A DNA stretch of 64,000 bases from Lytechinus pictus. Its lineage: Eukaryota. Every line of letters starts with the position of its first letter. Position 1 is the first letter of the stretch. Position numbers and translations under genes: made by a program. Under the pieces are notes generated by a model. That model ran no database searches. It had not been told where the DNA came from and saw only the letters and a list, made by a program, of their open reading frames with translations. This document shows, piece after piece, positions 53,175-59,415 of this stretch. The stretch spans positions 31,930,001 to 31,994,000 of the forward strand of contig NC_087256.1 in the NCBI RefSeq assembly GCF_037042905.1, read 5' to 3'.

Positions 53175-56100
53175 ATTGTTTTAAACAATACCTCTAAGGA
53201 GCAGACCCCATCTATTGATCAATTTTGATGGTCTTGTCCGCAAACCAAGCACCCTAACTCCGCACATGGATTCATGTAAATATATTTCAACAGAAAACAA
53301 ATCACATTTGCGTTTGTTTGTGCATAATCGATTATTTACTTTTTCATTTCATTTAATTGAATTTAAATATATATACATATACATGTATATATATAGATAT
53401 ATCCATATTATACTTTTTACAAGCATTAAAAGATAACAGAAAAATAAAAAAAATCGCACAATTTTTTTGTCCTCCATCGATTTATACTTCATTCTCTTAA
53501 TCGGTTCTATCCGAAACGTTATTCGCTTGATCCGAAGTAAATTCTACAGTCACATAAATGACCGATTTTAATCGACTGATGATATCCGACTATTTGGCTG
53601 ATCCGACATAATGCTTTAGTCACATCAATGAAATCGAATTAAAAACCTACAGACGATATACCATTCAAAATAGTTTGATTGGTCTGGAGTTGGTTTGGTT
53701 CAGTTCATGTGACTGTGGCCAGAATTAGGTTGACATTCACTCAGTCCCTTCACTCTTGGCAATGATAAATAACCTCGAGAAGATGACAAAAATGGCAGAG
53801 TTCTTTACCTCCTATCTCGCTTTCACCTCATAATGTAACAATCTCCACCCTCCGCGTGTCTGGTTGGGCCTAAAATGGCACAAATAAAAAGATGGAGCTG
53901 GCCCGGGGGTCTTGTCACCCGGGGGCAACGGGGGAGAAATAAGAGACGAAACTGGGCTGAGAGCACGCCCCGGAGATGTAGATTACCATCTAAGCCTTCT
54001 CATGTTCACTACCCCATCCGTCTTCTATCCTCCCTTCTTTGCCTCGTCTCCATTTTCTTCCACCATCGCCCCCCTCTCCCCGAACATGGGATTTGAGGTT
54101 CGATTATTACCGCGCACTGAGTGAAAGGCCACTGGATGGATATAAACAGGAACTATAGTTTCAAAAGTCTCTATAATCGTGATGCGAAAATGACGTACAG
54201 TACAAGCTGAAAAATCTTTGAAGCAAATCTTTTGTTGCCTTTTTTGCTCCTACAATACTTTCCTCGGGTAAATAATACCGCCCACATCAATGCCACTACC
54301 CTGTACGATTATTTGGCATGGTGATTATTACTCGGAAGGGGTGATGAATACAGATCAACACTCTTCTTTCAAATACTTATCGGTTATTATGAATAAACGA
54401 ATCACTTATACTCTTTCAAATGAATGTCTCCCGGTCGAGAGAGATCAAAGATTTTAATTTGCCAAATACTGTCAGCGGTGTTAAATGCTGAACCTTTATG
54501 AGATATCTTTATATTAGGGTGTCCAATGTATTCATGTCCTAAATGTGCATGGATATAAGTTACTTGGAGTTGTCATAATATCTCTTTTAAGGAAAATCCC
54601 CTCTTTATCTTATGAAACAAAATCTAACTTCCATATCAGTTTGCGATAATATCTAACAGTTTAATATTCGTAGTTAGCGAATCGGAAACGATTTCAATTT
54701 TAGATTTTCACTGGAAACCGGTGTAACAGAGAGAGAGAGAAAATTATAAAAGGCTGAGTTTGAAAATGGTATACTTCTATGTACAGACATTTAGTGAGTG
54801 AGAGAAGTGAGAGAGCCAGCGAATAATTAATTCTGACATAGTTTTGACATGTAAACGATGATCAAGATAAAAGGGAGAATGATGACGAGTAAATCACAAA
54901 ATCTTAAGAATTGTACTTTTTTGCATTTAAGAGACTAAATATTTGAAAATGTTATGAGGTCAGTAGAATACTACACAAAACAAGGTTTTGATTGCTGATA
55001 TATATAATTTCGACTCATTGGGCTCTTAATAATGCTTTGATACTTCACGTGGCATGAATTGTGGCAAGAAATTATCATGATGATGACAGTAAAAATTTGA
55101 AAATCTTGCTTATATACACATTTCAAATGCTGGGCAACATGCTGTCCACTGTGTTGGGTAATTAGTCCAGTCAATATAGGGTTTGACCCACCACTAATTG
55201 CAACACGAGATATTCCACTGCAATGCTTTCAAGGAAGGTCCTCTAAACAACATACTAAAAGTCCCAAGAAATCCAAGCAGTGGAAATTTATGAAATTTGC
55301 ATATTATGCAAATTAGCCATAACAAGTTAGAAAAATAAGGAAAATAGCCCAAATATTACAAATTGAGTGTCCAAAACAATTCAATTTGAGCGAAAATTCA
55401 TGATAAGTAACGGTATTCAATGTTTTTTGTCATAAGTGCAAAAAATATACCTCATTTGCATAATATGCAAATAAGCATCCTTATATGGAAAAATGTCAAG
55501 GTATTGTGATTTTTCTCTCATTATCTGCTTGAAAATTTCAGTAATGTTGGAATTTACATGCTGCTATCACTAAGGACGTTGAATACATTTGTATTCAGCT
55601 TAGTGTCTGTAGTGTAATTTGCATATTATGCAAATAAAAGTATCTAACATGTTATAAATATTCAAGAAAACACACTGGTGATACATCCCTAAAAAATTGC
55701 AAGTAGATTATCTATTGAAATTGGAATATGGCAATACCTTACAGGAAGGTTTCCTAAACACCATATTAAAAGTCCTTAAATATACAAGCATATAGGAAAA
55801 TCACAAAATTTGCATTTTATGCAAATTAGCCATAATAAATTACAAATAAGGAAAATAATCCAAATATTGGAAATCAAGTGCAATCAATACGAATTGAACT
55901 GAAGCCCGTGATAAGTTTTACAAATTTATTTATGTTTTAAATAAAAAATCGCAAATAAATCTACCTCATTTGCATATATATGAGCATCTTTATATGGAAA
56001 AAAATCCAGAAATTTTGATTTTTCTCACAAAAACAGTTATGAATACATTTCAGTCTAGATCAATATGATGTGATCACTAAGAATGGCAAATAAATTAATA

Positions 56101-56514
56101 ATCAGCTTAATATCTGAAGTGTAATTTACATATTATGCAAATAAGCATCCGACATGTTATAAATATTCAAGGATACACATAAGTGATACTTTCCTCTAAA
56201 ATTCCATGTAGATTATGTGTATTAACCATGATGGCCTTCCCTACACTTCTTGCTTGGTTGATATTGAGTTTTGTCACGAGCAGTTACCCCACTCATATTG
56301 TACAATGATGAGTCCATTCTACATGGATCCCACTGCTTGAATTTTTCATTATTTCCATCCAAGTCTTGCTCTCTTCTTGACTTTGTATAGAGACTTTGCG
56401 TTTCTTGCGAGTATAGTCCACGCTAGCAACTCCTGGATTGCCAAGTGATCAGCACAAGATGTCACACCCGTTCAAATAAAAGCCCATTAGCTTCGAATAT
56501 TTGGTCCTTGTAGC

Positions 56515-56982
56515 ACACCAATTAGCTTATAAACTTGGGGTCCTTGTATTTAAAGCGCTTAATGATAAATCTCCACCCTACATCTCAGAGCTCTTATCTC
56601 AGCATAGACCAACACGCAGTCTCAGATCAGCAGCTCAAGCATTGCTGAGGGAATCTCTCAGCCACACAACCTGGGGTGACAGAGCCTTCTACATCTCTGG
56701 ACCAAAGCTGTGGAATAGCCTTCCCCAATTTATCAGGAGAGCAGAGGCCCAATAAACTTTTGAGTCTTACCTGAAGACCTTTCTGTTCCCCACTCCAACA
56801 TTATCCCAAGACAAGAATAACTCAATTGTAGCATTACTAGGACAGTATTTGAATTGAATGGTGATCCTAAGCACTGTTTGAAGATATTGAAATTTGTGAG
56901 ATATTTCCTATTTTGAGCAAGCGCCATGAGCGCCCAGCTGAGGCGGATACCGACGCTTTACAAGAACCCATCATCATCATCA
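56515..56982 (+). pseudogene. L2-clade LINE 3' fragment inside the Academ-like element
   Basis: YKLGVLVFKALNDKSPPYISELL..RPTRSLRS..WGDRAF..GPKLWNSLP..LKTFLF, then a 3' UTR and (CAT)n tail. Confidence 0.9.
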
Positions 56983-57349
56983 CTTGTCTTGGTGGTGAAC
57001 ATGAGTACTTGCTTGGAACACCCTTAATATCACCATCAAATACCATCCAACATTGATTAGACAGTGTGTACCACTTCCAAGATTTATTTGCCACAATGTG
57101 CTACTCATGGGTATACTGTGAGGTTATCCAGATGAATAAAATTTTATGGTACGACTAAGGATGTTCTTCTGGAGGAATGCTGACTTTAATAGTGTCATGC
57201 AGATGTACTTTGGACAATCATACAGATCTGTACTGAAATCCGACAAGTCGAGCATAGGAGACTGAATGCCAATCAAGAGGACTTTAACAAGAACACACCG
57301 TTAACCATGTCTTCTTCCGACACAGGTTGCCTCAATGAGAGAATGGACA

Positions 57350-57975
57350 TAAGTTGTGTCGGAAGATGTCAAGAGTTTTAGAGAAAGGCTAGGAAGGCTT
57401 GCACATTCTAGAGCTCCAAAAGCATCAGTGAGGTAAAGCTCAGAATTGCTACAATGCATTAAAGAGGACAATAAGAGGGTTTGTAGACAAGCCTATAATA
57501 CATAATTTGTTGACCGGATTGACAATGATCCAGGCTGTAACAATTAGCATGCTGGGAGCCCTTAATATCAATAGCTATGACTACATTGGAATATAATTAT
57601 TAAATGAAAGCAAAGATTTTTAGTCTTAGTATTCACCACTGATCATGATGATGATGACGCTGAAGTCCTGGGACCCAGTCCTGACCCAGATATGGCCAAA
57701 TAACATATTGTTTAGTCAAGCAGGTGTAGCCAGACTACTGAAGAAATTGTTAAAGAAAACAACCTGCATGAAGCTACTAGGCCAGACGGAATCTCTGCTG
57801 CACTTTTTAATGAGACTACTCATCAGATCTTACCTGCCATAAGTTTGCTTTTCCTGGCCTCCCTTTATCATGTTTATGCGGTGAAATTTCAAGAAAGTCT
57901 AAGTCGTTCCCATCCATATAAGAAAGGGTTGTCAACTCTAACAAACTACACACCAATTCAAATACTGGGCTTTGT
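57350..57975 (+). pseudogene. Heavily decayed CR1/L2-group LINE ORF2 segment (region at the start of the RT domain)
   Basis: NLHEATRPDGISAALFNETTHQILPAISLLFLASL, then VVPI..KKG..NYTPI, matching KAxGPDGI..VxPIxKKG..NYRPI. Many frameshifts. Confidence 0.75.
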
Positions 57976-59415
57976 TCTTGCCAATCCCATCATCTTGTCA
58001 GACTAATGCTTAGGAAGCGAAGAACATATTTCCAGTATTTTTCCTTGAATATAAATCATATTAGGATAGATTTGAATGCTTAGTGATAGCAGCATATTAA
58101 TTTGAAAAACTGAAATGTTTTCACTGCAGTCAATGTGATAAAAATCTAAATTTCTTGACATTTTCCATATAAGGATACTTATTTGCATAATATGCAAATG
58201 AGGCAGATTTGCTAGCTTTTTTAAATAAAGACATTGAATTTATTGATTCATAATGTTCAATATTACTTGCTGTGGACATTTAATTTGTAATCTTTGGATT
58301 AATGTCCTCATTTTCTTTTTTTTTTAATGGCTAATTTGCATAATATGCTAATTAATTTTCAGGTATTGGGATGAATTTTCGTGCTTAGTGATATAGTAGC
58401 ATATTAATGTCAACATTAATGAAATGTTTTCAAGCAGTCTATATGAGAAAATTCACAATATCTTGACATTTTTTCCATATAAGGATGCTTATTTGCATAA
58501 TATGCAAATGAGGTAGACATTTTTGCACTTTTGATTAAAAACATTGAATTCAGTTATTTATCATGAATTTCCATTCAAATCAAATTATTTTGGACATTTA
58601 ATTTGTAATCTTTCGATTATTTCCCTTCTTTTTCTAATTTTTCATGGCTAATTTGCATAATATGCAAATTTCATAAATTTCCACTGCTCGGATTTCTTGG
58701 GACTTTTAGTATGTTGTTTAGGGGACCTTCCTGGAAAGCATTTCAGTGGAATATCTCGTGTTGCAATTAGTGGTGGGTTACCCCCCTATTCTGGCTAGAT
58801 TGACTGGACTAAATGTATGTTGGTAATATATATATATTTCTGGGCAATTATTATCCAATTGAGCAAGTTTATTACCCAATTATTAGTTTTTATAACCCAA
58901 TTTGGACAGATTTCAACCAATAGTTTTGTGGACAGTATGTTGCCCCGGGTTGGTTAAAAGTTGGGCATTTTCCCCAACTATTTTAAGAGTGTAGAGCAAT
59001 GTCATGAATATGGTGATATGGTGAAACAATTTTAATTCACGAAGTATTGATGCATTGAACTTGTCGAAGCAATCAGACAAATCACTCAATCCGGATGGTA
59101 TAACCTATAGTTGATTAATATACTTTATGTAAGTAGTACAGTCAAATCCAAATTTCATTGTATGAAAATGAGAAAAAAACCCAAATTTCTTATAGTCCTT
59201 TATGAATTCTTTGTTCCGTTGCGGTATGGTTTAGAGCGAATGAAGTTAGATTCGTTGTCTTATTTTAGATAATAATGATGATGAAGTCCTGGTTGGGTAA
59301 AATTTAGTGGCCTTTAATGAACTTCATACCACCAAATACAGGTCATCGACAGGTCATCATTTTATTTTCATTTTCCCCCAACAACAGCAACAATAAAACA
59401 TCTAGCAATCCTTAA

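What the first reader, a model, noticed from the sequence alone, without database searches (positions are those of the whole stretch)
55163..58811. Academ-like transposon carrying ten phased double-octamer palindromes
Seen: ATTTGCAT-(3 nt)-ATGCAAAT, two back-to-back octamers, at 55295, 55454, 55617, 55808, 55968 (half-degenerate), 56124, 58181, 58334, 58491 and 58651. Spacing within each arm is 153-163 bp, with one interval of 191. The left arm is two ~510-bp units of three sites each. The sites are better conserved than the spacers. Known: ATGCAAAT is the POU/Oct binding site, and TAG-starting long TIRs with 3-4 bp TSDs fit the Academ superfamily. Inference: either these are transposase-binding sites that mimic the octamer, or the element recruits host POU dimers at near-nucleosomal spacing. 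In the second case it would be a mobile Oct-responsive enhancer array, here landed among candidate regulatory modules.
Basis: partly seen in the sequence, partly recalled or inferred. Interest (0 to 1): 0.8.

Follow-up and report, generated by a model that had tools for sequence, protein, structure and literature searches.

The report
Non-autonomous transposon with phased double-octamer palindromes
This is one copy of a young family of about 220 non-coding cut-and-paste transposons whose long end regions carry evenly spaced palindromes; these are kept intact only in lineages that go on jumping, so they most likely bind the transposition machinery and are not host enhancers.

Summary
Nine near-perfect ATTTGCAT-N3-ATGCAAAT palindromes and one decayed one sit at the stated coordinates, 153-163 bp apart with one 191-bp gap.

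Window 55163-58811 is a 3649-bp copy of a non-autonomous DNA transposon. A full copy is about 4.07 kb.
- The genome holds about 220 left ends and 1,501 perfect palindromes.
- The terminal inverted repeat is a perfect 13 bp, TAGTCCAGTCAAT. The arms are about 1.06 kb (six sites) and 0.78 kb (four sites).
- The target-site duplication is 3 bp in 16 of 18 full copies, here AAT.
- There is no ORF over 80 aa.

Across 39 left and 25 right arms, substitutions private to one copy are as common in palindrome cores as in flanking DNA (2.08% vs 2.28%). Substitutions shared between copies are three-fold depleted in the cores (0.82% vs 2.60%, p = 3e-15). The sites are therefore selected during propagation and decay neutrally after insertion. 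This points to cis-acting sites for transposition, probably bound by a dimeric transposase or accessory protein. It counts against a host-maintained Oct enhancer array.

The Academ label is unverified. No autonomous partner was found, and XPG-bearing repeated ORFs are absent. The architecture resembles CACTA elements most closely, but the termini are not CACTA.

Verdict: an ordinary kind of element in an unusually tidy form.

The parts
55163..58811 (+). One copy (3649 bp) of a non-autonomous cut-and-paste transposon family. It lacks about 358 bp of the 4071-bp reference copy L037:101-4171; the deletion lies near window 57021.
   Evidence: 98-99% identical terminal 168 bp at 40 or more loci, both ends found in 18 copies, and the alignment to the reference copy.
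55160..55162 (.). Left copy of the target-site duplication, AAT
   Evidence: Paralogous empty sites in Logan contigs join 55162 directly to GTATG..., so only one AAT is present there (tables 5 and 5c).
58812..58814 (.). Right copy of the target-site duplication, AAT
55163..55175 (+). Left 13-bp perfect terminal inverted repeat, TAGTCCAGTCAAT
   Evidence: The flanks vary right up to the T.
58799..58811 (-). Right 13-bp perfect terminal inverted repeat (reverse complement of TAGTCCAGTCAAT)
55163..56225 (+). Left arm: terminal region plus two ~510-bp units, with six palindrome positions
   Evidence: (families D3, D5, D7, D8, D11)
58027..58811 (-). Right arm: terminal region plus two ~310-bp units, with four palindromes. 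The outer ~480 bp matches the left arm at 83-89%.
   Evidence: (I1 is 266 nt at 89%; also D1, D6, D10)
55295..55313 (.). Palindrome 1 (class a), perfect
55454..55472 (.). Palindrome 2 (class b), perfect
55617..55635 (.). Palindrome 3 (class c), perfect
55808..55826 (.). Palindrome 4 (class a, unit 2), perfect, centre TTT
55968..55986 (.). Palindrome 5 (class b, unit 2), with its right half decayed. It is decayed in the family consensus too, not only in this copy.
56124..56142 (.). Palindrome 6 (class c, unit 2), ATTTACAT half. This G>A change is the family consensus.
58181..58199 (.). Palindrome 7 (right arm, innermost), perfect
58334..58352 (.). Palindrome 8, with one change private to this copy (ATGCTAAT)
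   Evidence: the consensus is perfect
58491..58509 (.). Palindrome 9, perfect
58651..58669 (.). Palindrome 10 (right arm, outermost), perfect
56519..56980 (.). Secondary ~462-bp insertion inside the family's internal region. My reading is that it is SINE-like; this was not tested. Older copies lack it.
   Evidence: L057 and L068 skip reference 1350-1853. One search shows a joint 56518>56981 in DNA contigs, and RNA loose ends at 56520 continue in the same sequence.
55118..55162 (.). Left part of the ~190-bp high-copy MITE-like repeat into which the element inserted
   Evidence: inverted repeat GGGCAACATGCTGTCCAC; very high contig depth
58815..58961 (.). Right part of the host MITE-like repeat

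Best explanation
Window 55163-58811 is a recently inserted copy of a non-autonomous cut-and-paste DNA transposon that depends on a transposase supplied in trans. Its ends have a 13-bp perfect terminal inverted repeat, which is the presumed cleavage site (inferred). Inside each end lies a long subterminal arm carrying 19-bp palindromes (two ATGCAAAT half-sites, 11 bp centre to centre) about every 160 bp: six positions on the left and four on the right. The palindromes are cis-acting sites required for transposition. Most likely they are bound by a dimeric DNA-binding domain of the transposase or of an element-encoded accessory protein. Such a protein would load several copies on each arm and help pair the two ends before cleavage, as TNPA does on the subterminal repeats of En/Spm (CACTA) elements and as Sleeping Beauty transposase does on its IR/DR sites. 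Their identity with the POU octamer is most likely coincidental. Shown here: family structure, copy number, target-site duplications, lack of coding capacity, and selection on the sites during propagation but not after insertion. Inferred: which protein binds the sites, and the end-pairing role.
For: - Family and mobility. The left-end 30-mer occurs 222 times at up to 2 mismatches. The right-end 27-mer occurs 181 times exactly. The terminal 168 bp are 98-99% identical in the best 40 copies. Of 18 full copies, 16 have a perfect 3-bp target-site duplication, one has 4 bp and one has a mismatch. Paralogous empty sites match.
- No coding capacity. The reference copy has no ORF over 78 aa.
- The palindromes belong to this family. 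The genome holds 1,501 perfect 19-mers and the reversed control finds none. Palindromes with flanking bases foreign to the family are only about 35 scattered single sites. All nine G-flanked sites bar one lie in family copies, and the rest that could be checked by coordinate lie beside family ends.
- Selection signature. In 39 left and 25 right arms, singleton substitutions are 2.08% in palindrome cores against 2.28% in the 70-bp flanks (odds ratio 0.91, p = 0.47). Substitutions shared by two or more copies are 0.82% against 2.60% (odds ratio 0.31, p = 3e-15). All eight testable sites show the depletion, and it holds at A/T and at G/C positions separately.
- Long-term conservation. Cores are 100% identical between the left and right arms and between the right-arm units, while spacers are 82-89% identical. 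The three spacer classes are mutually unrelated (z below 5).
- Precedent. In CACTA elements, 13-bp TIRs plus asymmetric, palindrome-forming subterminal repeats are cis-determinants bound by TNPA-like proteins, and the duplication is 3 bp (PMC2613891). In Sleeping Beauty all four sites in the TIRs are required (PMC7827188).
Against: - No autonomous partner or transposase was identified, so the binding protein is unknown.
- Selection at the level of transposition cannot tell a transposon-encoded binder from a host factor recruited for transposition.
- Each half-site is a perfect POU octamer, and the host genome has about four POU-domain genes.
- Singletons are not purely post-insertion changes, and the copies sampled were those best matching the query. 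Excluding the selected first 168 bp did not change the result.
- The innermost left-arm sites are decayed in the consensus itself, so not every site is needed.
Confidence: 0.6

Rival explanations
1. The palindromes recruit the host's own POU/Oct proteins as cofactors of transposition. These would act as architectural or loading factors, as HMGB1 does for Sleeping Beauty. From my own knowledge, Oct-1 does the same at the octamer in adenovirus terminal repeats. The sites are still selected for mobility, but the binder is a host protein.
For: Each half-site is the exact consensus octamer ATGCAAAT. The host has POU-domain genes at four loci. The selection signature, protected during propagation and neutral afterwards, fits this as well as it fits transposase binding. 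No element with its own distinct arms bearing these palindromes exists in the genome, and no partner was found.
Against: As I recall them, the known cooperative POU dimer sites differ from this arrangement. PORE is ATTTGAAATGCAAAT and MORE is ATGCATATGCAT. Here the ATGC subsites face each other across 3 bp. This comparison was not tested here. Strict 19-bp dyad symmetry with a fixed 3-bp A/T centre is typical of a dedicated homodimer. Subterminal repeat arrays in known elements bind element-encoded proteins.
Confidence: 0.15
2. The element is a mobile Oct-responsive enhancer array whose palindromes are kept because the host uses them.
For: There are ten high-affinity-looking octamer pairs per copy and about 1,500 in the genome. 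The ~160-bp spacing is close to a nucleosome repeat.
Against: After insertion the cores gain private substitutions at the same rate as flanking DNA (2.08% vs 2.28%). In two older copies, 11 of 202 core positions are already changed. This copy lies inside another repeat. RNA reads across the element are sparse, fall on both strands, and show no preferred start. Single exapted copies cannot be excluded.
Confidence: 0.05
3. The palindromes have no function and are passive relics of tandem duplication of a ~160-bp monomer.
For: The arms clearly grew by duplication of ~510-bp and ~310-bp units.
Against: Shared variants are three-fold depleted in the cores at every site, while the private mutation rate is equal. 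The three spacer classes share no detectable similarity, yet the cores are identical.
Confidence: 0.03

Closest known systems
CACTA (En/Spm, Tam1, Tgm) elements of the CMC superfamily
   Same: Both have a 3-bp target-site duplication and a 13-bp terminal inverted repeat. Both have long, asymmetric subterminal regions packed with repeated, palindrome-forming motifs that act in cis. Both have non-autonomous derivatives mobilised in trans (PMC2613891).
   Different: The termini read TAGTCC..., not CACTA. The motifs are few, 19 bp long, perfectly dyad-symmetric and regularly spaced about 160 bp apart, not densely and irregularly packed. None of the 12 Transposase_21 matches in the genome (nine in uninterrupted frames of 657-914 aa) lies near a family end.
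IR/DR-type Tc1-like elements (Sleeping Beauty)
   Same: Both have long TIRs with several spaced transposase-binding sites per end. In Sleeping Beauty all sites are needed, the complex assembles in a fixed order, and a host cofactor helps (PMC7827188).
   Different: Sleeping Beauty has two direct-repeat sites per ~220-bp TIR and a TA duplication. This family has four to six palindromic sites per 0.8-1.1-kb arm and a 3-bp duplication.
AcademX (the Academ lineage with 3-4 bp target-site duplications)
   Same: The duplication length matches: 3 bp, with one 4-bp case in 18 copies. AcademX is reported to make 3 or 4 bp (PMC10045372).
   Different: No Academ-type transposase was found. As I recall Kojima 2020, which is not held here, AcademX families encode an XPG nuclease. 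XPG_I and XPG_N match only about five single loci in this genome, none near a family end.
PIF/Harbinger
   Same: Both have a 3-bp duplication. The target leans to T-W-A with C at positions -4 and -5. The superfamily is very active in this genome, with 150 matches scored. From my own knowledge, Harbinger uses a Myb-like partner protein that binds subterminal sites.
   Different: Only 20 of 65 ends have TTA or TAA. No DDE_Tnp_4 match lies within 10 kb of an unpaired family end. The Harbinger loci on contig C1 have no palindromes nearby.
POU octamer dimer sites (PORE, MORE)
   Same: Each half-site equals the octamer consensus ATGCAAAT.
   Different: The geometry differs: two full octamers in inverted orientation, separated by 3 bp. 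No host-level constraint is seen on inserted copies. Binding was not tested.

Membership tests
Non-autonomous TIR (cut-and-paste) DNA transposon | Terminal inverted repeats flanked by a target-site duplication of fixed length, in many dispersed copies | tested here: met
   13-bp perfect TIR. 3-bp duplication in 16 of 18 copies. 222 left ends. Flanks are unrelated between copies.
Non-autonomous TIR (cut-and-paste) DNA transposon | No transposase gene of its own | tested here: met
   No ORF over 78 aa in the 4071-bp reference copy.
Academ (AcademX) | Target-site duplication of 3-4 bp | tested here: met
   The literature value comes from PMC10045372.
Academ (AcademX) | Mobilised by an Academ-type DDE transposase | not testable with these tools
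   No Pfam model exists and no partner element was found.
Academ (AcademX) | XPG nuclease domain encoded by the autonomous element | tested here: not met
   XPG_I matches four loci and XPG_N four loci, three of them the same genes. None is repeated and none is near a family end. One 729-aa open frame with a weak XPG_N match at C2:66706938 was not examined.
   No reference for Academ termini was available in the papers held.
CMC / CACTA | CACTA-type termini (5'-CAC...) | tested here: not met
   Termini are TAGTCCAGTCAAT.
CMC / CACTA | 3-bp target-site duplication and subterminal repeat arrays | tested here: met
CMC / CACTA | Partner with a Transposase_21-type transposase | tested here: inconclusive
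   12 matches, nine in uninterrupted frames of 657-914 aa, none near a listed family end. Their own termini could not be read.
PIF/Harbinger | TWA (TTA/TAA) 3-bp target-site duplication | tested here: inconclusive
   20 of 65 ends are TTA or TAA. There is a T-W-A bias, but most ends are something else.
PIF/Harbinger | Partner with a DDE_Tnp_4 transposase plus a Myb-like gene | tested here: inconclusive
   150 matches, none within 10 kb of an unpaired end. The C1 loci lack palindromes.
Host POU/Oct-dependent enhancer | Octamer sites under host purifying selection after insertion | tested here: not met
   The singleton rate in cores equals that in flanks.
Host POU/Oct-dependent enhancer | POU binding and reporter activity | not testable with these tools
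   Needs EMSA, ChIP or reporter assays. The host does have POU genes.

The most novel reading that the evidence does not exclude
The family uses the host's own Oct/POU proteins as the loading or architectural factor for transposition. Double octamers would be held one nucleosome length apart, since three unrelated spacer classes all measure about 132-144 bp. Each new insertion would then drop up to ten high-affinity Oct dimer sites into the genome, about 1,500 in all, giving raw material for Oct-dependent regulation.
Probability: 0.12. Interest if true: 0.75.

Novelty: new member of a known kind. Interest (0 to 1): 0.35.

Why it matters
The family shows clearly how to separate selection for mobility from selection for a host function. 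The same 16 bases are protected on the branches that kept transposing and are free to decay once a copy has landed. The contrast between private and shared variants can be reused on any young repeat family whose motifs resemble transcription-factor sites, before an enhancer is claimed. The regular ~160-bp spacing, kept across three unrelated spacer sequences, is unusual for transposon ends. It suggests a length constraint in the nucleoprotein complex, from wrapping, looping or an intervening nucleosome, that would be worth testing. If the binder turned out to be the host Oct protein, the family would be a rare case of a DNA transposon depending on a developmental transcription factor.

Tried and rejected
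**Search for the autonomous partner**
- I listed the exact left ends (first 100, contigs C1-C12) and exact right ends (first 100, C1-C9) and paired them by coordinate.
- About 60 pairs are 3.2-5.5 kb apart. Only two are wider, at 7.06 kb and 14.7 kb. Both are family copies interrupted by nested retroelements (L079 and L080).
- Fifteen left ends had no exact right end. An internal family marker and 180-bp probes showed that 13 of them are ordinary copies.
- Two remain unexplained, C3:78113953(-) and C5:18508560(+).
- The three copies with no right end within 5 kb hold a nested LINE-like ORF, an internal duplication or a nested MITE.

**Termini and palindromes outside the family**
- The terminal 13-mer followed by G or T gives 17 hits against 11 in the control. 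The hits that carry palindromes are family variants or an old copy.
- Palindromes with flanking bases foreign to the family are only scattered single sites.

**Pfam scans of the genome**
- I scanned for XPG_I, XPG_N, DDE_Tnp_4 and Transposase_21. No match lies next to a family end.

**Limits and dead ends**
- The key Academ papers (Kojima 2020; Yuan and Wessler 2011) are not held.
- Earlier scan notes gave no coordinates.
- Laying reads did not settle whether this insertion is polymorphic. The flank at 54843-55023 has no contig cover, and the joints seen come from paralogous copies of the host MITE.
- An RNA loose end led to a single locus, C15:15835132, which could not be fetched.

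
Full report
**1. The observation**

- Seven sites are perfect: 55295, 55454, 55617, 55808, 58181, 58491 and 58651.
- Two sites have one mismatch, 56124 and 58334, and 55968 is half-decayed.
- None of 100 dinucleotide-preserving shuffles of the window reaches the observed count.
- Spacings are 159, 163, 191, 160 and 156 bp on the left and 153, 157 and 160 bp on the right.
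- The left arm is two ~510-bp units of three sites. The right arm is two ~310-bp units of two sites.
- The outer ~480 bp of the two arms are inverted repeats of each other at 83-89% identity.

**2. What the thing is**

The terminal 168 bp recur at 98-100% identity at 40 or more places in the window's own 812-Mb genome.
- The left-end 30-mer occurs 222 times at up to 2 mismatches.
- The right-end 27-mer occurs 181 times exactly.
- An internal marker occurs 130 times exactly.

I fetched 20 further copies, of which 17 had both ends within the 5 kb fetched.
- Lengths run from 3198 to 4656 bp, with a mode near 4070-4080 bp.
- With the window copy this gives 18 full copies. The flanks form a perfect 3-bp target-site duplication in 16 of them, a 4-bp one in one copy (CAAG), and a duplication with one mismatch in one copy.
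- In the window the duplication is AAT.
- The bases outside the first T vary freely, so the element ends precisely with TAGTCCAGTCAAT on both sides. That is a perfect 13-bp TIR. After it, the right arm carries an ~11-bp indel relative to the left.

The 4071-bp reference copy (L037:101-4171) has no ORF longer than 78 aa, so the family is non-autonomous.
- The window copy lacks about 358 bp of the internal region.
- Two older copies, 80-87% identical, lack a further ~500-bp block. That block is therefore a secondary insertion into the family's ancestor.

Contigs from three DNA runs of the same species join window position 55162 directly to GTATG.... These are uninterrupted paralogues of a ~190-bp, very high-copy MITE-like repeat. 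They show that the element landed inside that repeat and that one AAT is the original target.

**3. The palindromes belong to this family**

- The genome contains 1,501 perfect 19-mers. The reversed control finds none, and I estimate that fewer than one is expected by chance.
- All those listed lie in arrays at family copies.
- Flanking-base combinations never used by the family give only about 35 scattered single sites. All nine G-flanked sites bar one lie in family copies, and the others that could be checked by coordinate lie beside family ends. None forms an array.

**4. What the palindromes are for**

All copies are young, so comparing copies cannot show conservation in the ordinary sense. 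I therefore split the substitutions in 39 left arms and 25 right arms into two classes.
- Private substitutions are seen in one copy only and arose mostly after insertion.
- Shared substitutions are seen in two or more copies and were inherited through at least one round of transposition.

| Class | 16 specified core positions | 70-bp flanks | Odds ratio | p |
|---|---|---|---|---|
| Private | 2.08% | 2.28% | 0.91 | 0.47 |
| Shared | 0.82% | 2.60% | 0.31 | 3e-15 |

- The depletion of shared changes is seen at each of the eight testable sites.
- It holds for A/T and G/C positions separately.
- It holds after dropping the 168 bp by which the copies had been selected.

So the mutation rate is the same in sites and spacers. 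Inserted copies are not protected, but variants in the palindromes rarely pass on to daughter copies.

Over the longer term the pattern is the same.
- Cores are 100% identical between the left and right arms and between the right-arm units, where spacers are 82-89% identical.
- In the two old copies, 11 of 202 core positions have already changed.

This is the signature of a cis-acting requirement for transposition.

**5. The spacing**

- The three spacer classes are terminus-to-a, a-to-b and b-to-c. They show no detectable similarity to one another, direct or inverted (z below 5, against z of 13-64 for true paralogues). Yet all are 132-144 bp long.
- The one long interval (191 bp) holds a partial internal copy of the terminal region.
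- Either a very old ~160-bp monomer has lost all spacer similarity while keeping its length, or the spacing itself is constrained.
- With only three independent spacer classes the case is suggestive, not proven.
- 153-163 bp is not a whole number of helical turns, so strict helical phasing is unlikely (my arithmetic).

**6. Mechanism**

The best-supported reading is as follows.
- The 13-bp TIR is the cleavage site.
- The palindromes bind a dimeric DNA-binding protein supplied in trans, either the transposase or an accessory protein.
- Multiple loading on both arms drives end pairing.

The closest described architecture is the CACTA group. It has 13-bp TIRs, 3-bp duplications, and asymmetric subterminal regions full of palindrome-forming repeats. 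These repeats are cis-determinants bound by TNPA-like proteins (PMC2613891). Sleeping Beauty's IR/DR ends give a second precedent for several spaced, individually required sites plus a host cofactor (PMC7827188).

What the data cannot decide is whether the binder is encoded by a transposon or is the host's Oct protein recruited for transposition. The host has POU-domain genes at four loci. Each half-site is a perfect octamer. From memory, the arrangement matches neither PORE nor MORE.

**7. Superfamily**

The 3-bp (rarely 4-bp) duplication fits AcademX, which is reported to make 3 or 4 bp (PMC10045372). It fits CMC, PIF/Harbinger and Zator equally well.

I could not find the autonomous partner.
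- About 80 left ends on contigs C1-C9 were resolved by pairing, an internal marker and short probes.
- All are ordinary copies or copies with nested retroelements, except two that remain unexplained.

Pfam scans gave no link to a known transposase.
- XPG domains, which as I recall accompany the transposase in AcademX, occur only at about five single loci.
- There are 12 Transposase_21 matches and 150 scored DDE_Tnp_4 matches. None is next to a family end.
- Academ, Zator, Sola and Kolobok transposases have no Pfam model (PMC5751038).

The target shows a loose T-W-A preference, with TTA or TAA at 20 of 65 ends and C enriched at positions -4 and -5. That leans towards PIF/Harbinger-like targeting but is far from the strict TWA of that group.

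The Academ label is therefore unverified. One expected feature, a repeated XPG-bearing ORF, was looked for and not found. The termini are not CACTA, so the element cannot be filed there either.

**8. Expression**

One RNA-seq run gives sparse reads on both strands across the element. Most are 90-95% identical and so come from other copies. There is no preferred start or end. This says nothing for or against enhancer activity.

**9. Verdict**

The element is real, well defined, young and abundant. It is a new member of a known kind: a non-autonomous TIR transposon with subterminal binding-site arrays. Its sites are unusually regular and happen to equal the POU octamer. The enhancer-array reading is disfavoured, the transposition-site reading is supported, and the superfamily is open.

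Noticed in passing
window 55118-55162 and 58815-58961: The element is nested in a ~190-bp MITE-like repeat with inverted ends GGGCAACATGCTGTCCAC / GTGGACAGTATGTTGCCCC. The summed contig depth there is as high as or higher than over most of the element itself.
   Followed up: partly
L041:720-1302 and L031:2691-3280: Small MITEs with ~14-bp inverted ends (GGAGAATGAAACCC..., GGGGAATCCAGCC...) are nested in two family copies at TTAA(A)-like targets. The two inserts are weakly related to each other.
   Followed up: partly
L039:3007-3864: A 285-aa ORF lies inside a ~2-kb nested insertion in a family copy. It has a coiled-coil-like N-terminal half, and my reading is that it is LINE ORF1-like; this was not tested.
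   Followed up: no
L080:1264-3369 (G000 C2:40531913-40534018): A 701-aa gag-protease-reverse-transcriptase ORF of an LTR retrotransposon is nested in the family copy that spans 14.7 kb.
   Followed up: no
G000 C2:66706938-66707192 (-): A weak XPG_N match (26.9 bits) sits at the start of an uninterrupted 729-aa frame and is not one of the XPG_I loci. It could be an Asteroid-like host gene or a transposon-borne nuclease.
   Followed up: no
G000 C15:15835132-15835161: This is a single-copy locus. RNA reads from another individual carry about 50 nt like window 56045-56093, flanked by unlike sequence that maps here with 2 mismatches.
   Followed up: partly
G000 C8:31416661(-), C8:35717726(+), C4:16904869(+), C8:32363682(-): There are recurrent size variants of the family. 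The internal marker lies 3029 bp from the left end in two copies and about 2555 bp in two others, where 1117 bp is normal. Five copies are 5.47-5.5 kb long. These suggest sub-families that carried nested inserts along.
   Followed up: partly
G000, many loci (for example C15:2117429-2118555 and C9:16245490-16246611): About 17 Harbinger transposase copies have identical scores and open frames, and a second set has 446-aa frames. PIF/Harbinger looks recently active in this genome.
   Followed up: no
65 family ends (flanks in L001-L077 and the window): The target preference is T (57%), A/T (86%), A (55%) in the duplicated triplet. C is enriched at -4 and -5 (35-38%, against 18% background).
   Followed up: yes
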